The notes under the pieces are model-generated. The model saw nothing but the letters and a program-made list of their open reading frames with translations, did not search any database and had not been told where the DNA came from. Shown here one piece after another: positions 17,296-63,832 of a stretch of 64,000 nucleotides of DNA. The stretch comes from Vitrella brassicaformis CCMP3155 (taxonomy: Eukaryota > Protista > Chromerida): NCBI GenBank assembly GCA_001179505.1, contig CDMY01000343.1:48201-112200 (forward strand), written 5' to 3'. The translations under genes were made by a program, and so were the position numbers. Each line of letters begins with the position of its first letter. The first letter of the stretch is position 1.

Positions 17296-17351
17296 AACCC
17301 TGAACCCTGCAGAAACCCTTAACCCTAAGCCCAGCTGGCTAAACCCTAAAC
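17296..17351 (+). promoter_or_regulatory. Degenerate telomere-like (AACCCT/AAACCCTAA) cluster upstream of A2
   Basis: aaccctgaaccctgcagaaacccttaaccctaagcccagctggctaaaccctaaac. A homologous cluster lies at 63503-63566. Confidence 0.55.
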
Positions 17352-25185: not shown

Positions 25186-26484
25186 ATGTCCAGTGCCCGG
25201 CGATGGCTGACAGGCATGTTCACGGTGAGGCAAGCGAGGGAAGAACCACCACATGCACAACTGACGCCTGTCTGTGGGTGTTGATTGCAGACATCGGCTG
25301 CTGCTCGGGGTGAGGCTGGCACTTCTAGCACGTCATCGTCACTCGAGTCGGCCGCTGCCAATGGTAACCCAACATGTTCGCTGCAGAAAGGCAGAATGAT
25401 ACACCTGTAGTTCTGTGTGTGTGTAATGGTCACAGGTGGCGGTCAGAGAGAGGGCGTTTCGTTCGCTGCCCTCCCTGCTGAGGTGACGCCGGCCATCGCT
25501 GAGTGCCTCAGCAGCTATGCCGACCTGTGTGCCTTCCGCCGCATCGACAAGAGCCGCCATACCGCCCTCACCCCCACCGTCCTGCTGCCCATTCTGCAGC
25601 GTCTGTTGGTCGTCCTGCCCTCCGCTGTCGGCCTCGGTGTGTTGGTGGAGGTGCCCATCCCCCAGCTGCCGCTCCCTGCGGCACTCAGCCACGGCTGCTG
25701 CGTTACGGCACTCTTTGAACAGCTCAGCCGCCGGCTGTTCATTCTCGAGAAGGGCGGCAAGTGGGCCAGATGGAAACCTGTGCTGGAGATGCTGTATCTG
25801 CTGAGAGGCAAGAGGCCACTGGTGCTGGGGGATGACAACTTCGGCGTCTTCGGCAGCCGGGCGGCCTTCATGAGTGAGACGGAGGCGATCCGCCAGTGGA
25901 AGATGCTGAGCTGGGGGGTCACTGTCGATCATGGCGGCCGAGAGATGAGGCTGATGGTGCGCGATAAGATCCTCGAGCGCTCGTCTGCCTATCAGCTCCC
26001 CACCCTCGTCACCTCTGCCAGCCCCCTCTTCCGTCATGATGCATTCGATGGCACCGACCCGCCCACACAGCTGAATGGCTACCTGTACCCCACTTACACA
26101 TCGATGATGGCCTTCGAGCTGTTCCGCCGGCTGATCATGAGCGGCCCCATCTATAACATCAGGCACTGGTCGTCTTACTGTCGTGATACTGCTGCATTCC
26201 GGCGTGTGGGCGAGCTGCTGGCGGCCCCTCCCAGCGACGCGGCACAGTGGGGGGCGGCCGTATTCGACAAGAGGCCGGGATGGCATTATAGGCTGGTGGT
26301 CTTCGGCAGTGAGGCGATGGGCGAGGGGAATCTGGCAGTCATCGAGCTGGTGGGCTGGGAGAATGGACGGTATGTCATCGTGTTCACGACCGAGTCGGCC
26401 CCCTTCGCCCAGACGCGCACTGTGGCGATGAGAGTGCTGGGGAATCAGCTGGAGGGCAAGGTGTGGCGAAGGGAGAACGAATAG
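25186..26484 (+). CDS. Subfamily-B member B1 (F-box-like N-terminus): two small 5' exons plus one large exon
   Basis: Exon 1 MSSARRWLTGMFT, exon 2 ...SAAAN, then exon 3 GGQREGVSFAALPAEVTPAIAECLSSYADLCAFRRIDK...VWRRENE*. Confidence 0.8.
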
Positions 26485-26489
26485 AGGTG

Positions 26490-27060
26490 GATGGGTGACA
26501 GGATGCGTAGTTAAGACTACGATTGCTTGAGGGTGAGACAGACAGATGAATAGCCAAGCAACAAGTCTCCCTCTGTCTGTCTCTCCCTGCATGCGAAGCG
26601 CATGTCGTGTGTACTGTGTGGTGCGTTGCATTGTGTTGACTCTCTCCCGTGAACGGTCTATGGCATGTGTGAGGCTAATGTATGGCGTGACTTCCCTTCT
26701 CATCGCGTGTGCCTTTTCGTGTGTGCACTCATTCATGTGTGAGTGGACGCATTGGGTTAAAAGCTGATGTTTTTCCACCCTTATGCGCCGAAGTGATGTT
26801 CCGATGGATGAGCGTCAGGCTTGGCTTTGTGGCTGTGTGTTGTGAATGAATGAATGGAGACCAATTCATACAGATGTCTGAATCCAGTGTCTGCAGTTAT
26901 GCTCACGACGCATAAGTCGATCAACCACACGGCGCAGCCTGACGAACACTATGATCAGGCCTGATGCAGCCGCGTGTACCTTTCCACTCAATTGTTCACT
27001 CACCCGCCGCACTGCACCGACCCATTGATAAACAAACGCATTCACTTGGCTCTCTGCCTC
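26490..27060. repeat. Dispersed 3'-flank repeat of B and C genes (copies at 29980-30660, 37300-37480 rc, 59490-60140 rc)
   Basis: Shared core gcagcctgacgaacactatgatcaggcctgatgcagccgc, and gtgtgcactcatt..tgtgtgagtggacgcattgggtt. Confidence 0.85.
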
Positions 27061-28633: not shown

Positions 28634-29974
28634 ATGTCCAGTGCCTGGCGATGGCTGACAGGGCTGTTCACGGTGAGGCCAGCGAAGGCAGAAGCACCGC
28701 ATGCACAACTGATGCCTGTCTGTTGGCGTTGATTGCAGATGTCGGCTGCTGCTCCTGACGGGGCTGGCACTTGTAGCACATCATCGGCTGCGTCTGCTGC
28801 CAATGGTAACCCAACATGTTCGCTGCAGAAAGACACACGGTTGCCGATACACCTAATAACACTGTGTGTGTGTGTGTGTGTGTGTGTAATGGTCACAGGC
28901 GGCAATCAGCGAGAGGGCGTTTCGTTCGCTGCCCTCCCTGCTGAAGTGACGCCGGCCATCGCTGAGTGCCTCAGCAGCTATGCCGACCTGTGTGCCTTCC
29001 GCCGCATCGACAAGGGCCGCCATGGCACACTCACCCCCACCGTCCTGCTGCCCATTCTGCAGCGTCTGTTGGTCGTCCTGCCCTCCGCTGTCGGCCTCGG
29101 TTCTCTCGTCGTGTGTCTAATCCCCCAGCTGCCGCTCCCTGAGGCACTCAGTCACGGCTGCTGCATAACAGCACTCATCAAAGAGCTTAGCCGGCGGCTG
29201 TGGATGATGGAGAGGGGCGGCAGCTGGGCCAGATGGAAACCTGTGCTGGAGATGCTGTATCTGCTGAGAGGCAAGAGGCCACTGGTGCTGGGGGATGACA
29301 ACTTCGGCGTCTTCGGCAGCCGGGCGGCCTTCATGAGGGAGACGGAGACGATCCGCCAGTGGAAGATGCTGAGCTGGGGGGTCACTATTGGTTCCCATCA
29401 GAGACCCCTGATGGATGGCGACAAGATTCGCGACCGCTCGTTTGGCTATCGTCTCCCCACCCTCCTCACCAAACCCAGCCCCCATTTCCCCCATGACACA
29501 TTCGACCCCGCCGACCCGCCCACCGACGACTGCGGCACTTATGCCACCTACACTTCAATGGCTGCCTTTGTCCTGCGCGGCTGGCTTGGTGACGGCGGCC
29601 ACACCAGTTGCGCCAGATACTGGCTGTCCGACCGTTTCACTTCTGCTGCATCCCGGCGTGTGAGTGAGCTGCTGGCGGCCCCTCCCAGCGATGTGGCACA
29701 ATGGGGGGCGACCGTATTCGACAAGAGGCCGGGATGGCATTATCGGCTGGTGGTGTTCGGCAGTGAGGCGATGGGCGAGGGGGACATGGCAGTCATCGAG
29801 CTGACGGCTTCGGGGGATCTGACGGATTCGGGGGATTGGACGATGGGAGCTTGGCGCCTTGTGCACATCTACACGACCGAGTCGGCCCCCCACGACCAGA
29901 CGCGCTCTGTCGTGATGCGAGTGCTGGGGGACCACCTGGGGGGCATGGTGTGGCGAAGAGAGAGAGAGACGTGA
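28634..29974 (+). CDS. Subfamily-B member B2 (F-box-like)
   Basis: Same exon layout as B1 (MSSAWRWLTGLFT / ...SAAN / GNQREGVSFAALPAEV...), with a 413-codon open frame ending VWRRERET*. Confidence 0.8.
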
Positions 29975-30895
29975 ATGGGCGGCACGGTAGATGGAGTACG
30001 GTGTGCTTGACTGAGGGTGAGGCAGGCAGGCAGACAGACAGACAGACAAGCAACGGCTTTCCCTCTCTCTCTCTCTGCCTGTATGCGACCTGCGGGTGCG
30101 TCTGCGGTGCGGTGCTTTGCCTTGCCTTGCCTTGCCTTGTGTTGACTCTCTCTAGTGTGGATGGGCTGGCATGTGTGAGGCTAGCGTATGGCGTGACTTG
30201 CGTGCTCATCGCGTGTGCCTTGGCTGACTGATACGTATCAGTAGCAAGCAGTGATTCAACTCTTCGTGTGTGCACTCATTTATGTGTGAGTGGACGCATT
30301 GGGTTGAGACGACGGTCGTACGTCTTGCCTTTGTGATGGGACAAGGCTGATGTTTTTTCGTCGGTGCGCCTTTCTTTGTTCCTCCACCCTCATGCGCCGA
30401 AGTGATGTTCCGATGGAGGAGCGCCAGGCTTAGCTCTGTGTGTGTGTGTTGTGAACGAATGGAGACCAACTCATACAGATGTCTGAATCCAGTGTCTGCA
30501 GTTATGCTCACAACGCATAAGTCGATCAACCACACGGCGCAGCCTGACGAACACTATGATCAGGCCTGATGCAGCCGCACATACCTTTCCACTCACCCGC
30601 CACACTGCACCCACTCATAGATAAACAAAGGCATTCACTTGGCTCTCTGCCTCTATCTAAAGTACTCGTAGAGAGTGAATGTATACCAAAGACCGACAAG
30701 CATCGATCTTCGTTTTTACGGAGAGTGCTGGGGGATCAGCTGGGGGGCACGGTGTTGTAGCGCGGGTGAGAGACAGCAGACAGCTGTTCTGACGTGTCCC
30801 TTCCCCGGCTGCATGCATGAGTAGGAAACAAACACTGGTCGTAGTGGACGTCAGTTGATCTGCATGCATTGACGTCAGAGACACAACATTATGCA

Positions 30896-55126: not shown

Positions 55127-56456
55127 TCACGTCTCATCCTCCTGCCGCCACACCATGCCCCCCAGGTGGTCCCCCAGCACTCTCATCACAACGGTGCGCG
55201 TGTGGTCGTGGGGGGCCGACTCGGTCGTGAAGATCTCCACACGTCGTCCATTCGTCCGTGTCAGCCGAATGACTGCCATGTGCCCCTCGCCCATTGCCTC
55301 ACTGCCCAGCACCACCAGCCGGCGATGCCATCCGTCCTCCCACTTTTGGTCGAATACGGCCGCCCCCCACTGTGCCGCATCGCTGTGAGAGGCCGTCAGC
55401 CGATCACCCGCACGGAAGTACGCGGCAGAGGCACGACAGTAAGACGACCAGTGTCTGATGCGATTGATGTGGTTCCCTTCATCAAGCCGGTCGAACACAA
55501 TGAAGGCCACCATGGACGTGTAGTTGGGGTACGTCCCGCCGTCCAGCTGTGTGTGTGGGTCGGCGGGGTCGAATGGTGCATGAGGGAAGAGGGGGCTGGC
55601 AGAGTCGAGGAGGGAGGGGAGCTGATAGCCGGGCCACTGGTTTAGAATCGAGTCGCCGTCCATCAGGGGTCTCTGTTGGCCTCCCTGATTGACAGTGGCC
55701 CCCCAGCTGAGTATCTTCCACTGGCGGACCGCCTCCGTCTCACTCATGAAGGCCGCCCGGCTGCCGAAGACGCCGAAGTTGTCATCCCTCAGCACCAGTG
55801 GCCTCTTGCCTCTCAGCAGATACAGCATCTCCACCACAGGTTTCCATCTGGCCCAGCTGCCGCCCCTCTCGAGCATGAACAGCCGGCGGCTGAGCTGTTC
55901 GATGAGGGCCCTGGTCAGGGCCACCGTGACGGCCACACCCTGAGTGAGCTGTGGGACGGGCACCTCCACCAACACACCGAGGCCGAGTGACGCCGCCACA
56001 ATAGGCAGCAGACGGATCAGGATGGGCAGCAGGACGGTGTGTGAGAGGGCGGTATGGCGGCTCTTGTCGATGCGGCGGAAGGCACACAAGTCGGCATAGC
56101 TGCTGAGGCACTGGGCGATGGCCGCCGTCACTTCAGCAGGGAGGGCAGCGAAGGGAACGCCCTCTCGCTGATTGCCGCCTGTGACCATTACACACACAGA
56201 CACTTGTACATACAGACCATCACACATTATATACGTCTGCATGATTGTGTCTTTCCGCAGTGAACATGTTGGGTTACCATTGGCAGCAGACGCAGCCGAT
56301 GATGTGCTACAAGTGCCAGCCCTATTACGAGCAGCAACCGGCATCTGGCAACGCTCACAGAGTGGCACAGACAGGCATCAGTTGTGCATGCGGTGCTTCT
56401 TTTCTCGCTGGCCTCACCGTGAACAGGCCTGTCAGCCATCGCCAGGCACTGAACAT
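55127..56456 (-). CDS. Subfamily-B member B3 (F-box-like), head-to-head with A3
   Basis: MFSAWRWLTGLFT / ...SAAN / GNQREGVPFAALPAEVTAAIAQCLSSYADLCAFRRIDK...VWRQEDET*. Confidence 0.8.
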
Positions 56457-56943
56457 GCCGGCGAAGCATCCTGGGGATTGACCGTTCATCTCGCTGCCAC
56501 ACACGAGAGAGAGAGCAGCAGACCTTGTGAGTGACAGATCTTCCACAGACACACAGAGGTCACACAGACTGTCATCCCTCATGCATCAGGCCCTCTTGCT
56601 TGTCCTCTCTCACCTCAATGAGCCAGATGAGCATCACTCAGACAGATGGGCGGCGGCATCTGTGTGGACCGATGACATCACGACAGCTCTTTGGGCAACT
56701 CCCACACACTCTACACGGCCCCGTTGTCAGAGGAAATGTAGGGGAAAAGGGAGAGGCCTGCATGCTAAGCTCGCAGATGGATCAGCTCGCAGACGGAAGT
56801 CTTTGCAGCCTCTCGGTCCACTCAGTGAGGGTAAGATGGCAGCCAGAAATGCCAAAAACCAGATGCCTTTCTGTGTCTGCTGTGTGCCTGCAGATCTCCC
56901 ACGCAAATCACGCCTCTCTGAGACCTTTCCACAGCCACGACTG

Positions 56944-58053
56944 ATGCGGCCCACTGGTGCAGCGCCCTCGTCCCAGCCCCTCTTCCAGCCCGCCGAGCTC
57001 TTTGACATGTCATTGCCCATCAGCAAGATGGCCCGCATGGCCATGTCCACTGACGATGCCACGCGAGCCGCTCTCCGCTCACAGATCGTCACCCTCACTC
57101 GGCAGCAGGAGCTGCTGGGCCACACCTCGGCGACCGTCACCAGCACGCTGCTCAACGGCGTCCAGCGGCACATCAACAAGGCCATCAGTCGTCTTGGCTT
57201 GGAGGACGTCTTGGCCTTCGACATTGCTGGTGACGTGGAGGGCGGCTTGAGGGTCGTCTGGCTGCTGAAGCAGGGCAGCGGTGAGGAGTGGCGGGCGATG
57301 GGGCGGTTCCTTCGGCTGGCCTTCATCCATCGGCTGACCCCCGCCAACACGGCTCGGCCCCTTCAGCTGTCGGCCGACTCGCTGCCCACAGCAACGGCCT
57401 TGCACCAGCTGCCGATCGCATTGGCCATCTACAAAGCATTCGGCGACCTCCTCACACACGGAGGGACCAGCCTGGCGCTGCAGCAGGCCGACAACGGGGC
57501 CTATCGGATTGGCACTTTCACCTTCCGTGTGGTGGCATATGGTGATCTGCCGGGTGGCCATCGCTGCGCCAACGGCTACAGGGGGACCGACCCCGCCATC
57601 CGCTGGGGCTTTTTTCTGTACCCCTCATTCTCGGCATGTCTCCTGCACACGCTGCTGTACCGATGGGCCCACGAGGAGGGGGTGAATGTGAGGAAGGTGC
57701 TGCGGGCAGATATCGGCCGTCGTGACCCTCGCTATGGCCGTCTAATGATCGAGGGCATCACAGAGGATCAGGGCATCGCTGTCGACTTCCGTTTCGACTG
57801 GGGCGATCTGAATGCGAATCCGACTGACTATCGTCATGTGATAGTGAGTGGCTTCCGACCAAACGAGGCCGTCGCCGCCTTTCTATGGGTGGAGTCCGGC
57901 CGCATCGCTATGTGGACAGCCGAGCGATCTGCGGCCGATCGGTCTCATCCACTCGTTCAGCGCTTCCCCGAGTCGGTCGGTGCTGTCCGCCGTGTGCTGA
58001 GGGCATTCGGCGTCGAGCGTGACGTCATCGAGAGGGGGATGGTGCTACTGTGA
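56944..58053 (+). CDS. Subfamily-A member A3, intronless, apparently intact, non-F-box N-terminus
   Basis: Open frame with LKQGSGEEWRAMGRFLRLA, DPAIRW, VIVSGFRPNE and MWTAE, colinear with A1 and A2. Confidence 0.8.
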   Translation: MRPTGAAPSSQPLFQPAELFDMSLPISKMARMAMSTDDATRAALRSQIVTLTRQQELLGHTSATVTSTLLNGVQRHINKAISRLGLEDVLAFDIAGDVEGGLRVVWLLKQGSGEEWRAMGRFLRLAFIHRLTPANTARPLQLSADSLPTATALHQLPIALAIYKAFGDLLTHGGTSLALQQADNGAYRIGTFTFRVVAYGDLPGGHRCANGYRGTDPAIRWGFFLYPSFSACLLHTLLYRWAHEEGVNVRKVLRADIGRRDPRYGRLMIEGITEDQGIAVDFRFDWGDLNANPTDYRHVIVSGFRPNEAVAAFLWVESGRIAMWTAERSAADRSHPLVQRFPESVGAVRRVLRAFGVERDVIERGMVLL

Positions 58054-59150: not shown

Positions 59151-60142
59151 CAGCAAGCGCCTCTATCGCTGGCAGCGGCCCTCTGTGAAATCTTTCACGG
59201 ATCTAGCATTCTGTTGATGAAGGCAAGAAGTGACAGATAGAGGTTTTATCGGTGTATGCGTGTCGACGTCCGATGCTGTGCGGTGCAGGGTGTGTGGTGG
59301 TGTGTTCACTTGTATGTGCATCTGATCGTCCATCAAGAACGGCAGGCAGTCAAGAAGCGGACCATGCGGCAACCAATCTTTGTCTCCCACACATACGTCT
59401 GTCTGTCTGCATCTCTCTGTGTCTGTGTCTGTCCGTCTGTCTGACTGTCTGCCTGCCTGCCTGCCTGTCTACCTGCCTGCTCGTGTCTCTCACCCTCAGT
59501 GGCAGACAGACGAGTGAATGCGTTATTTATCAATCTGTGGGTGCAGTGCGGCGGTGAGTGTAAAGGTATATGAAGCCGCATCAGGCCTGATTATAGTGTT
59601 CGTCAGGTTGCGCCGATGGGTATGAGGTAGTCTACATTCATTCATTCACAACGCACACACACAAACCAATCCTGGCGCTTATCCATCGGAACATCGCTTC
59701 GGTGCATAAGGATAGATGGGCAAAGAAAAGCTCACAGACGGAAAAATATCAGCCTTTGTCCCACCGCAAAGACGAGACATACGATTGTCGTTTTAACCCA
59801 ATGCGTCCACTCACACATGAATGAGTGCACACACGAAGAGTTGAATCACTGCTTGTACTCCGAAGACTCCAGTGTTTGTTTGCTACTGTCCAGTCACATA
59901 AGGCACAGGCGATGAGAACGCAAGTCACGCCATACATTCGCCTCACACATGCCATTAACCGTCCACGGCAGAGAGTCAAGACAATGCAAGGCACCGCACA
60001 GTACACACAAGATGCGCTTCGCAGACAGGCAGAGACAGACAGAGGGAGAGTTGTTGCTTGGCTGTCGATATGTCTGTCTGTCTGTCTGTCTCACCCTCAA
60101 GCAATCGTAGTCTTAACTACCCGTCCTGCCACCCATTTCCCT

Positions 60143-60451
60143 CTATTCGTTCTCCCTTCGCCACACCATGCCCTCCAGCTGATCCGCTAGCACTCTCATC
60201 ATCACGACAGTGCGCGTCTGTTTGTGGGGGCCCACTCGGTCGTGGAGATCCAACCATGACGCAAAGCCCCCCAGCAATGCAGGCAAACGGTCGTCATGTG
60301 CCCCTCGCACCATCGCCTCACTACCTACCACCACCAGCCGGCAATGCCATCCGTCCCGCTTTTCGTGGAACACGGCCGCCCCCCAGTATCTGATGCGGCG
60401 GATGTGCCAGCCGTTCACCGCCACCCGGCATACCTCACCCAAGTTCGTCAC
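60143..60451 (-). pseudogene. 5'-truncated subfamily-B fragment B4
   Basis: Only the C-terminal ~100 codons remain (WGAAVFHEKRDGWHCRLVVVGSEAM...RVLADQLEGMVWRRENE*), with compensating indels relative to the paralogs. Confidence 0.8.
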
Positions 60452-61122
60452 ATGGCGTCACAGAGCGTCCAAAAAGAACTCCATCAGGCTGGAACGCCAC
60501 ACACACACAGAGAGAGACACACACACACACCCTACAAACACGCGAGAACTAGACACCCCCAGAGACAAGCCATATGCAATCAACTCATGAATACGCCAAC
60601 AATGCTGTGCACACACCTCAGCGCCCATCCCACCCCACAGACACGACGAATGATACAACAGAACATCTCTCTGATTTTGCCCGAGTGTGGGCGAAGCGAC
60701 ACACAAGAGAGATAGGAAAGTGGGTCAGCCATCAATCTCTGCTGCTGTGTACATTACATGCACGTAGCGATAAACCTGTCCCCCTCCCACACACGACCTC
60801 GCCGGACCACGGCTGATGGGCTGATGGATGGATGCTTTCGTGCCATCAACCTGCGCACCAAGCAGATCCAGATCCACACACATGCACGACATCGGCTCAA
60901 AAAACACGCACTTGCCTGCTTGCTGACAAAACACGACATGTCCCTTCTCGCTGCTTGCTGACTTTTCAAAACACGCCTGCCTTCCAAGGCGAGCAAAATC
61001 ACACACCACATTCTACCCATGTTTGCGACTAGCCAGTGTTGGAAGGATCGAACAGAACAGGCCAAAAAACTATGACGCCACGACGAGCGAGCGACACATA
61101 CATGCACACCGACATACACCCC

Positions 61123-63458
61123 TCAGGTCTTGTCCTCGGGTGACGGGACGTCTGACGGCGTTATGGAGCTGCTTTTGGACTGGTCGGCGACCCTGATGCT
61201 GCTGTTGCTTTGACTGAAGTTGATGTGGGGGTTGACTGCGCCCGGCTTGGCCTTGCAGAACATGCCACCGAAATGGGGCCAGTACTGTGGCAAAACGAGG
61301 AAGAAGGGCACGTATGTGCGACGACAAAAGAGACGTGAGGAAGTGGAGTGGTTGTTGTGTATGCATGTACCATCAGCGGCACTGTGAGTGCGATGGTGAT
61401 GACGCACAGGCCGTGAACCTGAAATGGGATCCGCGGGTCGTCCTTGATATACTTGTAGATGAAGCCTGCCAGCACCGCACCAAAGTGGCCACCCTGAAAG
61501 AACAAGAAAGACCAGCACAGAGAGAGACACTCACGAGAGGTGTGAGGCAGCTTTCGTGTCGTCTTCTTACGTACCGCGGCTACGAGCGCTGAGACAATGC
61601 CACGATGCTGGGGCATCATGAAAGGCACAATGCCGTAGCTAGTGCCCTGAGACGTCTGCATGCACACACACAGAGGGAAGGAAGGAGAGAGACCATCGAT
61701 GCAATGATCCACCCATCGACGTGCATGTCACTAGAGGGCAATCAGCTCTCACCTGGACGAACAGACCGAGGACGCCGAGGCATGTAATGGCGGCTTCGAA
61801 TTGGCCCTCCCTCCCGAAGGCGACGAGCATGATGCCCTCCACCAGCAGGCAAATAAAGTGAATCCACAAGCGGCCCCGCATGCCCCATTTTTTGAAGTTC
61901 AAGTCAGACAGACCGCCGCCCTGCACGCCAGCCAACACGCACCAAACAAACAGCACACGCAACACAGCAAACGGCGTGTTCGTGGGTGACTGCATGCATG
62001 TGTGAGTTGAGTGCATCCAACCCACTGACTCACGAGTGGTCCGATAAAGTTATCCAACATAACGGCCAAAGATACGCTGACAGCACGGCCGGAAAGCTCC
62101 ACGGGGAGCTGGAAGAAGTCGTGGAAGTAGAGCACCAGCTGGTTGTTGAGCTGCAGCTCAGTCCCGAAGTAAGCCGCATACTGCAGCATCATCAACACAA
62201 CACGGTAGTCCTTCAGAGCCCTGCAAGAAGAACACAACTGAACAACACAACGGACACACGGCGACGTCCCTCTCCCCCTCCTGCTTCGTATGCACTCACT
62301 CGACGTAGTCCCACAGAGATGTATTGGCCTTGCCGAGCATGGATGTATGAAATTTGCCGTGGGGCGTGTCTTGCGAGGAGAACCAGACGACTAGCGAGAC
62401 GAGCACAAAGATGACGCCTGGGACGACCATTGACACCCTCCACGCAATGCCTACGCTCAGCCCAGCCTCCACAAAGCCCGAGAAGATACTCGGCATCAAA
62501 AACTGGGTCACACCACCGTCCAACTTGCCCAACGCGGCAGCTGTATTCATGCAGCGCGAAACACACACACACACACAAACCAGGAGGGAATATTGCTGCG
62601 TGGAGGCTGGTCTCAGTCAGTGTCCATGTATCTCACTGACCAGTGGCATTGGCGGTCCCAACAACGCTGGGTGCGAACATGAGTGAGCACCAGAACTGGG
62701 TGGTCACAAAGGTGGCCCCCACCCCGCCGATGAAGAACCGCACGGCGACGAGGCCGGCGCCGTTGACGATGAAAGCCGCGCATAGGACGGGGATGGCAAA
62801 AAGGGCCATGTACACGGACTGCACGACGCGCGGGCCGAACTTCTCCAGCAGAAAGCCCGTCGCCACCGTCATACCAATCGTGGATGCAACAGAGCTGATG
62901 GACGACAACAACGGAGAAAGACATGACAACAGACAGACAGACAGACAGCAGACGTCCACGTGCGTGGATGCTCTGCTTGTGCTGCACAGCTCACCATATG
63001 TTTGCGTTCTGCAGGACGTCCCTGCACTTGGGACCGCACACGCACATCAGTTGTGTGCCATATTCGGTGTACTCGTCACAGATGCCGATGGAGTCCCGCA
63101 CGGCCGGCATGAGAGGCGCAAGTGCGAACCTGAGTGAATCAATGAGACAGGCGCACACAACCAAGCACGAAGATCTGGCATCATGCATCCCTGGTCCGAT
63201 GTCCTGCGTGCGGACCATCCGACGAAGGTAAAGAAGAAGGATATCGTCGCGGCCCAGAACGCACGGGCATGCGGGTTGGTCTGCTTGCGCTTGCCAAAGT
63301 TCCTGCAGGACACGCGCACACACAGACAGCTCAAGATAGATGTGCACAGATCGGCTTGCATCTCACCAGATGCGTAAGACAGTGGCCTTGTCGTTCTCAC
63401 CAACAGGCCAGTCAAACTGAGGCTTGCTCTCCTCCAGGGAAATGGTGGGTTCGGTCAT
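61123..63458 (-). CDS. NRT2/NarK (nitrate-nitrite porter, MFS) homolog with non-canonical substrate-binding residues
   Basis: FDWPVGENDKATVLRIW, PHARAFW, FGPR, RFFIG..GATFVTTQFWCSLMFAPSVVGTANA, YAAYFGTEL, GGGLSD..GMRGRLW and GTSYGIVPF. Twelve-TM-like layout with canonical splice sites. Confidence 0.9.
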
Positions 63459-63502
63459 CGCAGAGGAGAAAAGGACGGATCTCTGATGTCAAGGGTAGGG
63501 TT

Positions 63503-63566
63503 CAACCCTGAACCCTGCTGCAAGAAGAAACCCTTAGCCCTAAGCCCCAGCTCCTAAACCCTAAAC
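63503..63566 (+). promoter_or_regulatory. Degenerate telomere-like cluster in the shared NRT2-like / A4 promoter
   Basis: caaccctgaaccctg...gaaacccttagccctaagccccagctcctaaaccctaaac, preceded by the inverted agggtagggtt. Confidence 0.55.
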
Positions 63567-63832
63567 GGGATGGCCTCGCCGATGTTGACCGCTGTGAAGC
63601 CTTTGAAGCTCTCAAGCCACTCAGTGAGGGTGCGAGAAAAGTCAGACAGGCAGAAGAAGCCCAATCAGTTGAACAGCAGTGTTTTCTGGTCTTGTGCCTG
63701 CAGATCTCTCGTTCGTCAGCCCATCGACAGCCACGACGTTCGTCATGTAGCGGATGAGCCATCGCATCAATCAGCCGCTGATGGCCATTGGTGGTTGTCG
63801 GCATCTGGTGACCGACTCGTGGTGACTGATTG

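What the first reader, a model, noticed from the sequence alone, without database searches (positions are those of the whole stretch)
61123..63458. NRT2-like transporter with a charge-reversed binding pocket: both nitrate-binding arginines lost
Seen in sequence: TM2 reads STIGMTVATG..FGPR where NRT2s have TIxxRxxxG..FGPR (Arg to Thr, ~62865). TM8 reads MLDNFIGPL|GGGLSD where NRT2s have MNLFARxLGGxxSD (Arg to Gly, Asn to Asp, ~62035-62060). The first nitrate signature reads ATAAALGKLDGGVTQ instead of AAGWGNLGGGVTQ (Asn to Lys, Gly to Asp, ~62515-62545). Established knowledge: these two arginines (E. coli NarK R66/R305, Aspergillus NrtA R87/R368) coordinate nitrate and are essentially invariant in the family. 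Inference: the rest of the fold and all splice sites look intact, and the changes are concerted (two Arg lost, one Lys and two Asp gained). This points to a neofunctionalised porter for a non-nitrate, possibly cationic or zwitterionic, substrate, or to a sensor, rather than decay.
Basis: partly seen in the sequence, partly recalled or inferred. Interest (0 to 1): 0.8.

Follow-up and report, generated by a model that had tools for sequence, protein, structure and literature searches.

The report
Nitrate-transporter paralog with rebuilt binding pocket
The alga Vitrella brassicaformis expresses an intact extra copy of a nitrate-transporter gene in which almost every residue known to hold nitrate has been replaced while the rest of the protein is conserved, so it probably does a different, still unknown job.

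Summary
Window 61123-63458 (minus strand) is a 10-exon gene of Vitrella brassicaformis CCMP3155, Vbra_3602 in a 2019 survey. Its 509-aa product is database protein P0001.

Two full-length cDNA contigs from separate runs show all nine GT..AG splices and encode exactly this protein. It belongs to the NNP/NRT2 branch of MFS transporters, inside a well-supported chromerid plus dinoflagellate clade.

Among 171 full-length relatives, the TM2 and TM8 arginines (E. coli NarK R89 and R305) are invariant. Here they are T114 and G330. Also changed are:
- NS1: G192A, W193L, N195K, G197D
- TM8: F321L, G322A, N326D, A329I
- TM10: E391Q
- TM11: G414A, N418H

The aromatic site residues F57, F167, Y284 and F288 are kept.

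Overall divergence is ordinary: 50.2% identity to the dinoflagellate consensus, against 50.1% for the canonical paralog P0269. The excess lies at clade-invariant columns, 14 of 64 against 2 of 64.

A closer canonical paralog, Vbra_21071 (about 78% identical), appears in a published supplement. At consensus positions, changes fall 26 to 3 on this gene's side.

Decay is unlikely, and canonical nitrate binding is very probably lost. A new substrate or a sensor role is plausible but untested. I found no paper describing this. It is a new variant of a known kind, of moderate interest.

The parts
60091..63499 (-). Transcribed unit of Vbra_3602. The 5' end lies at about 63493-63499. The 3' UTR runs from 61122 down to at least 60091.
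   Evidence: cDNA contigs L056 (2597 nt) and L057 (2367 nt). All ten exons are contiguous in both contigs, and the UTRs are colinear with the window.
63367..63458 (-). Exon 1 (ATG at 63458-63456), cytosolic N-terminus.
63216..63302 (-). Exon 2, TM1 (F57 corresponds to NarK F49 and is kept).
62995..63129 (-). Exon 3, the TM1-TM2 outer loop with the clade-typical C..CxCG..C cysteine motif.
   Evidence: The cysteines are shared with P0269 and the dinoflagellate NRT2s.
62641..62894 (-). Exon 4, TM2-TM4. T114 (62867-62869) stands in place of the invariant TM2 Arg. F167 (NarK F147) is kept.
62300..62540 (-). Exon 5, TM5-TM6. Nitrate signature 1 is altered: A192, L193, K195 (62524-62526), D197 (62518-62520).
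62034..62220 (-). Exon 6, TM7 and the first half of TM8. Y284 and F288 are kept. Changed: L321, A322, D326 (62052-62054), I329, G330 (62040-62042), plus two inserted residues.
61753..61920 (-). Exon 7, second half of TM8 (the GGxxSD motif is kept) and TM9.
61575..61655 (-). Exon 8, TM10 into TM11. Q391 (61647-61649) stands in place of a clade-invariant Glu. A414 (61578-61580) stands in place of Gly.
61371..61493 (-). Exon 9, TM11-TM12. Nitrate signature 2 reads AAGGHFG, with H418 at 61485-61487.
61123..61284 (-). Exon 10, the C-terminal tail and the TGA stop (61125-61123).

Best explanation
**What it is.** Vbra_3602 is a functional, expressed duplicate of a chromerid NRT2 (NNP-family MFS) nitrate transporter. 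Its 12-helix scaffold has stayed under constraint, while its central substrate site has been rebuilt.

**What changed.** The two arginines that bind nitrate and gate the NarK/NRT2 cycle are gone (T114, G330). The Asn that forms the third nitrate contact is now Lys (K195). Two Asp have appeared, on TM5 (D197) and TM8 (D326). The Glu that partners the TM8 Arg in this clade has become Gln (Q391).

**Shown.** Gene structure, expression, family placement, the substitutions and how rare they are, and how they are distributed along the protein.

**Inferred.**
- It can no longer bind or translocate nitrate or nitrite by the canonical mechanism.
- It most likely carries a different small solute, for which the retained Phe/Phe/Tyr cage and the new acidic residues would suit a small cation or a polar neutral molecule.
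- Less likely, it has become a non-transporting sensor or regulator.
For: **Real, expressed gene**
- Nine GT..AG joints are seen in cDNA contigs of three runs.
- L056 and L057 translate exactly to P0001.

**Family placement**
- TIGR00886 matches over its full model length, at 202 bits.
- The clade with P0269 and the dinoflagellate NRT2s has SH-aLRT support of 100.

**Pocket changes are unique among relatives**
- They occur in none of 171 relatives.
- Of 47 columns that are at least 95% conserved, P0001 deviates at 10. All 10 lie in TM2, NS1, TM8 or NS2. P0269 deviates at 0 and the median relative at 0.

**The scaffold is constrained**
- Identity to the dinoflagellate consensus is 50.2%, against 50.1% for P0269.
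- At clade-invariant columns the deviations are 14/64 against 2/64, Fisher p = 0.002.
- Relative-rate tests against P0269 are non-significant with all eight dinoflagellate outgroups.
- The AF2 model has pLDDT 88.9 and pTM 0.88 and shows an MFS fold.

**Close canonical paralog Vbra_21071**
- In the supplement of PMC6400420 it is about 78% identical.
- Differences at consensus positions fall 26 on this gene's side and 3 on the paralog's. This is my by-eye count, polarised against the consensus.
- 17 of 24 positions differ in the TM8 block, against about 20% elsewhere.

**Published mutagenesis**
- In NarK, R305K and Y263F are dead, R89K is weak, and G172 and G177 are needed. R305 hydrogen-bonds S366 (PMC4432589).
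- In M. tuberculosis NarK2, R58S and R259G are inactive (PMC3445494).
Against: - There is no functional data of any kind.
- No ortholog carrying the same substitutions was found. Conservation of the new pocket therefore cannot be shown.
- dN/dS could not be computed.
- The asymmetry of change is also what relaxed constraint on a dead binding site would produce.
- K195 keeps one positive charge at a direct nitrate-contact position, so some anion binding is not excluded.
- Pocket geometry and charge are inferred by homology only. The structure tool returns no coordinates.
- The comparison with Vbra_21071 was made by eye on a trimmed alignment printed in a supplement.
Confidence: 0.5

Rival explanations
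1. It is still an anion porter (nitrate, nitrite, chloride, bicarbonate or similar). K195 would supply the positive charge that the arginines used to give.
For: - K195 sits at the NarK N175 position, a direct nitrate contact.
- The Phe sandwich and the Tyr are kept.
- A published survey counts the gene as an nrt2.
Against: - In NarK even R305K abolishes transport and R89K nearly does (PMC4432589).
- R to G at the TM8 site inactivates NarK2 (PMC3445494).
- Two new Asp and the loss of the G172 and G177 equivalents, both needed in NarK, argue against an anion site.
Confidence: 0.15
2. It is a non-transporting MFS: a sensor, a regulator, or a partner subunit of the canonical NRT2s. It keeps the scaffold but not a working substrate cycle, as Snf3/Rgt2 do among the sugar porters (analogy from general knowledge).
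For: - The scaffold is conserved while the catalytic pocket is changed.
- It is expressed alongside two canonical paralogs.
Against: - It has no added signalling tail or domain. It is 509 aa with a short, low-confidence C-terminus.
- Nothing links it to signalling.
- A nitrate sensor would be expected to keep the nitrate-binding residues.
Confidence: 0.15
3. It is a duplicate on its way to loss. The binding site died first and is now drifting, while the ORF and expression persist for the time being.
For: - The 26:3 asymmetry of change after duplication and the heavy turnover of the TM8 block fit relaxed constraint.
- No ortholog is known.
- The gene lies 542 bp from a scaffold end, with a dispersed repeat in its 3' UTR.
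Against: - The 1530-nt ORF is intact and its nine introns are correctly spliced.
- Change is strongly non-uniform. Outside the pocket motifs it is about 80-85% identical to Vbra_21071.
- Overall divergence equals that of the canonical P0269.
- Clade-specific loop cysteines and MFS glycines are retained.
- The R330G / E391Q pair looks compensatory.
Confidence: 0.15
4. It is an artefact: a wrong gene model, an assembly error or RNA editing creates the odd residues.
For: None found.
Against: - The genome and two independent cDNA assemblies give the identical protein.
- No base differences were listed.
- I read the other two frames of the TM8 block by eye on the sequence. Neither resembles the canonical motif.
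Confidence: 0.02

Closest known systems
Vitrella brassicaformis Vbra_21071 (canonical nrt2 paralog listed in PMC6400420)
   Same: About 78% identical over 443 printed alignment columns. Same length class, the same N-terminus, the same loop cysteines and the same C-terminal motif.
   Different: Vbra_21071 keeps the TM2 Arg, GWGNLGGG, NLFAR, the TM10 Glu and GAGGN. This gene has changed all of them and has two extra residues before TM8.
Dinoflagellate NRT2 transporters (Amphidinium, Symbiodinium, Durusdinium, Alexandrium) and Vitrella P0269 (CEL92091.1)
   Same: Same well-supported clade, at 38-54% identity. The Cys-containing TM1-TM2 loop is shared.
   Different: All of them keep every nitrate-site residue.
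E. coli NarK / NarU (PDB 4U4W, 4JR9, 4IU8)
   Same: MFS fold. F49, F147, Y263, F267 and G268 are conserved as F57, F167, Y284, F288 and G289.
   Different: R89 is T, N175 is K, G172 is A, G177 is D, R305 is G, the S366 position is Q and the S411 position is A. The Arg-Arg repulsion gating proposed for NarK (PMC4432589) cannot operate.
Aspergillus nidulans NrtA and M. tuberculosis NarK2 (mutagenised NNP members)
   Same: Same family. The homologous arginines are NrtA R87/R368 and NarK2 R58/R259.
   Different: In those proteins, replacing either Arg inhibits or inactivates transport (PMC3445494). Here both are naturally replaced in an expressed gene.

Membership tests
Major facilitator superfamily | 12-TM MFS fold and a Pfam MFS_1 match | tested here: met
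   PF07690 at 58.1 bits against a cut-off of 33.4. AF2 model with pLDDT 88.9 and 12 long helices. Foldseek matches MFS structures at E about 1e-9 to 1e-10.
NNP / NarK-NRT2 family (TC 2.A.1.8) | Sequence homology to NarK/NRT2 over the whole length | tested here: met
   TIGR00886 aligns over model positions 1-368 at E 1e-59 and 202 bits. That is below the curated bacterial cut-off of 311.7, but so are the canonical relatives at 251-254 bits. The nearest relatives are named NRT2 and the clade support is 100.
NNP / NarK-NRT2 family (TC 2.A.1.8) | Two invariant intramembrane arginines (TM2 and TM8) | tested here: not met
   T114 and G330, against R in 171/171 relatives at each site.
NNP / NarK-NRT2 family (TC 2.A.1.8) | Nitrate signature 1 in TM5 (G-x-x-x-N-x-G with a glycine run) | tested here: not met
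   It reads AALGKLDGG where relatives have AGWGNLGGG. Four positions that are invariant or nearly so are changed.
NNP / NarK-NRT2 family (TC 2.A.1.8) | Nitrate signature 2 in TM11 (G-A-G-G-N-x-G) | tested here: inconclusive
   It reads AAGGHFG. The GG core is kept, while the first Gly and the Asn are changed.
NNP / NarK-NRT2 family (TC 2.A.1.8) | Aromatic cage and Tyr of the substrate site (NarK F49, F147, Y263, F267) | tested here: met
   F57, F167, Y284 and F288 are present.
NNP / NarK-NRT2 family (TC 2.A.1.8) | Nitrate or nitrite transport activity | not testable with these tools
   This needs uptake assays.

The most novel reading that the evidence does not exclude
The nitrate pocket has been turned into its electrostatic mirror image.

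- The Phe-Phe sandwich and the Tyr, which recognise a flat, delocalised ion, are kept.
- The Arg pair, one on the N bundle and one on the C bundle, is replaced by an Asp pair: D197 on TM5 and D326 on TM8.
- The protein would then carry a small or planar cation, such as guanidinium, an ammonium-type amine, or the guanidino or amino group of a metabolite. Urea-like neutral molecules are also conceivable.
- Closure would be gated by relief of Asp-Asp repulsion instead of Arg-Arg repulsion.

This would be a natural example of anion-to-cation conversion within one MFS family.
Probability: 0.12. Interest if true: 0.85.

Novelty: new variant of a known kind. Interest (0 to 1): 0.55.

Why it matters
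The two arginines are treated as the defining and 'perfectly conserved' feature of nitrate/nitrite porters from bacteria to plants. This gene is an expressed natural member that has lost both. It has also lost their Asn and Glu partners and gained Lys and two Asp.

It sits next to a roughly 78%-identical canonical sister copy in the same genome. That gives a compact natural experiment on how an MFS substrate site is re-specified, with only a few dozen candidate substitutions to swap between the two paralogs.

There is also a practical point. Surveys that count nrt2 genes to infer nitrate-uptake capacity count this gene as a nitrate transporter (PMC6400420), which is probably wrong for this copy.

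Tried and rejected
**Searches that found nothing useful**
- phmmer of single exons against PDB sequences gave only chance hits. A profile of alignment A1 was needed to reach NarK.
- The word-index protein search missed strong relatives. P0002 scores 452 bits against P0001 but was not among the 120 hits listed.
- A second search restricted to residues 1-110 and a metagenome scan did not return the close paralog Vbra_21071.
- Searches for Vbra_3602, or for NNP members lacking the arginines, found no paper.

I did not type it into any tool, so the script alignment, the formal relative-rate test and dN/dS against it were left out. Only a by-eye count on the printed supplement was made.
All whole-protein steps used the database protein P0001, after checking exon by exon that it holds each exon's translation.

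**Ideas tested and dropped**
- A second copy in the window: tblastn found none.
- A compensated frameshift as the cause of the scrambled TM8 block: I read the other two frames by eye, and neither resembles the canonical motif.
- Other hits that seemed to lack an Arg (P0013, P0018, P0094, P0006): these are gene models with non-homologous or missing C-terminal halves, not true variants.
- Pairwise dN/dS against P0269 or the dinoflagellates was not attempted. At about 50% amino-acid identity, synonymous sites are saturated.
- Foldseek gave only generic MFS matches and says nothing about substrate.

Full report
**1. What is at the coordinates**

Reading the minus strand gives a 10-exon gene with GT..AG introns of 64-113 nt:
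- E1 63458-63367
- E2 63302-63216
- E3 63129-62995
- E4 62894-62641
- E5 62540-62300
- E6 62220-62034
- E7 61920-61753
- E8 61655-61575
- E9 61493-61371
- E10 61284-61123

The CDS is 1530 nt, or 509 codons. Public run contigs laid on the region show exactly these nine joints, all CT..AC on the plus strand. They appear in three runs from different studies, and two contigs span the whole mRNA.

The same contigs, fetched as L056 (SRR646408) and L057 (ERR558152), carry an ORF that translates exactly to the database protein P0001. They contain the ten exons contiguously. The 5' UTR is 35-41 nt and the unspliced 3' UTR is 1032 nt.

I searched exon by exon (10/19). I then used P0001, which the representative search returned, after verifying that each exon's translation sits in it in order.

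P0001 is 'unnamed protein product [Vitrella brassicaformis CCMP3155]'. The gene lies 542 bp from the end of scaffold CDMY01000343.1 of GCA_001179505.1, so the window ends where the scaffold ends.

**2. Family**

- Exons 4, 5 and 6 hit NCBIfam TIGR00886 (NarK family) colinearly.
- The whole protein aligns over the full model at 202 bits. Its canonical relatives score 251-254 bits, and all are below the bacterial cut-off of 311.7.
- Pfam reports MFS_1.
- The nearest proteins are dinoflagellate NRT2s at 38-49% identity. A second Vitrella protein, P0269/CEL92091.1, is 50-54% identical.
- In a quick maximum-likelihood tree, P0001, P0269 and the dinoflagellate NRT2s form a clade with support 100. 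The end branch of P0001 is 1.04, that of P0269 is 0.92, and the median is 1.06.
- An AlphaFold2 model built on a 58-sequence alignment is confident (pLDDT 88.9, pTM 0.88). It is a standard 12-helix MFS that matches NarK among many other MFS structures.

**3.

I aligned P0001 with E. coli NarK (translated from L001) and 171-173 full-length relatives.

| NarK position | Relatives | This gene |
|---|---|---|
| R89 (TM2) | R in 171/171 | T114 |
| R305 (TM8) | R in 171/171 | G330 |
| N175 | N in 170/171 | K195 |
| G177 | G in 171/171 | D197 |
| G172 | G in 171/171 | A192 |
| NRT2 Trp (NarK L173) | W in 169/171 | L193 |
| F296 / G297 | F and G in 168/171 each | L321 / A322 |
| NRT2 Asn (NarK G301) | N in 168/171 | D326 |
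| NRT2 Gly (NarK S411) | G in 169/171 | A414 |

The NS2 Asn is H418. Within the myzozoan clade, Ala329 and Glu391 are also invariant (117/117) and are Ile and Gln here.

Kept are F57, F167, Y284, F288 and G289, which correspond to NarK F49, F147, Y263, F267 and G268.

The few other hits that seemed to lack an Arg are broken gene models. One unnamed metagenomic protein, P0125, was not pursued.

**4. What the literature says these residues do**

In NarK, the site is formed by F49, R89, F147, N175, Y263, F267 and R305.
- Nitrate is sandwiched by the two Phe.
- It is salt-bridged to R89.
- It is hydrogen-bonded to Y263, which is held by R305. R305 in turn bonds S366.
- N175 forms the third contact.

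R305K and Y263F are dead, and R89K is barely active. G172 and G177 are required. Arg-Arg repulsion, relieved by the anion, is proposed to gate closure (PMC4432589).

In M. tuberculosis NarK2, R58S and R259G are inactive. The homologous NrtA arginines R87 and R368 are likewise required (PMC3445494).

So three of the seven site side chains have changed here, along with two essential glycines and the partner of the TM8 Arg. Canonical nitrate handling is very unlikely. This is an inference from homology.

**5. Decay or re-specification?**

- *Overall divergence is ordinary.* Identity to the dinoflagellate consensus is 50.2% for P0001 and 50.1% for the canonical P0269. Deviations at columns conserved at 85% or more are 47 against 41 of 172. 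Tajima-type counts against P0269 are balanced with all eight dinoflagellate outgroups, and only one of six distant outgroups gives a clear excess.
- *The excess is at invariant columns.* P0001 deviates at 14 of 64 clade-invariant columns, P0269 at 2 of 64 (Fisher p = 0.002). It deviates at 10 of 47 family-wide conserved columns, against 0 for P0269 and a median of 0. All of these except position 133 lie in TM2, TM5, TM8, TM10 or TM11, the cavity-lining helices.
- *The scaffold is kept.* The other 37 family-conserved positions are retained, including the MFS glycines, GGxxSD and the clade's loop cysteines.
- *R330G is accompanied by E391Q.* The buried partner of the lost Arg is neutralised, which looks compensatory.
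- *A closer paralog exists.* The supplement of Ocana-Pallares et al. 2019 lists three Vitrella nrt2 genes: Vbra_21071, Vbra_3602 (this gene) and Vbra_691.
  - The printed, trimmed alignment shows Vbra_21071 to be canonical at every site above.
  - By my by-eye count it is about 78% identical to this gene, with 99 differences in 443 columns.
  - I polarised the differences against the majority consensus of alignment A1. Of these, 26 are on this gene's side and 3 on Vbra_21071's (binomial p about 1.5e-5, hand-calculated).
  - 17 of 24 positions differ in the TM8 block, where this gene also has two extra residues, against about 20% elsewhere.
  - These counts are manual and approximate. Vbra_21071 was not returned by any search. 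With no reference for it, I ran no script alignment or dN/dS.

Taken together, the intact 509-codon ORF, the nine correctly spliced introns, the expression and the strongly non-uniform divergence argue against a gene without function. They do not distinguish positive selection on a new site from free drift of a dead site in a protein kept for another reason.

**6. Mechanism (inferred)**

The formal charges I count at the site positions run from about +1 in canonical clade members (two Arg, one Glu) to about -1 here (K195, D197, D326). This assumes all of them face the cavity.

The retained aromatic cage plus the new carboxylates would suit a small cation or a polar neutral solute. D197 on the N bundle and D326 on the C bundle could play the gating role that the Arg pair plays in NarK. 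Alternatively, K195 and D326 could form an inter-bundle salt bridge. None of this is tested.

**7. Context**

- There is no nitrate-assimilation cluster here. The neighbours are unannotated ORFs, an ankyrin-repeat gene and a CRAL-TRIO gene. The survey lists no NAP cluster for Vitrella.
- No paper found mentions the altered site. The survey text holds no occurrence of 'arginine', and 'Vbra_3602' is in no paper's main text.

**8. Verdict**

This is a new variant of a known kind, and I score its interest at 0.55. The finding is real, clean and directly testable by swapping residues between two paralogs. Against that, it is known from a single species and there are no functional data.

Noticed in passing
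window 63495-63570: A cluster of degenerate telomere-type motifs (AACCCT / AAACCCTAA variants) lies directly upstream of the transcript start of this gene. A similar pair lies at 17316-17350. The window holds 3 matches where about 0.06 are expected by chance. This may be a telo-box-like promoter element or a relic of a subtelomeric position. The scaffold ends 542 bp upstream of the ATG.
   Followed up: partly
window 60091-60385: The distal 295 nt of the 3' UTR is a dispersed repeat. Copies at 69-76% identity lie at 26248-26536, 29702-29984 and 55146-55369. The last overlaps the C-terminal end of a 413-aa intronless ORF (55127-56368). The cDNA contigs may end here only because the assembly breaks in the repeat.
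   Followed up: partly
window 55127-58053: Two long intronless ORFs lie back to back in an otherwise intron-rich region: 413 aa on the minus strand and 508 aa on the plus strand. No family was assigned here. They are possibly parts of a mobile or repeated element.
   Followed up: no
P0125 (ENA metagenome contigs of 5-6 kb, 695 aa): Another NNP-like protein. It keeps the TM2 Arg, but it has Thr at the TM8 Arg position and degenerate nitrate signatures. Its organism is unknown. It may be an independent case of a re-specified NNP member.
   Followed up: partly
The search for homologous proteins: The word-index search did not list P0002, which scores 452 bits against the query. It also did not return the roughly 78%-identical paralog Vbra_21071. 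A blank from this tool for Vitrella paralogs is therefore not evidence of absence.
   Followed up: yes
window 62551-62589 and 62929-62948: Introns hold short simple repeats: a TG/CA run and a GTCT run. Several run contigs break there or join to unrelated sequence (loose ends and the 60834-to-62929 joint with only 20 letters on the shorter side). I read these as assembly artefacts, not splicing.
   Followed up: no
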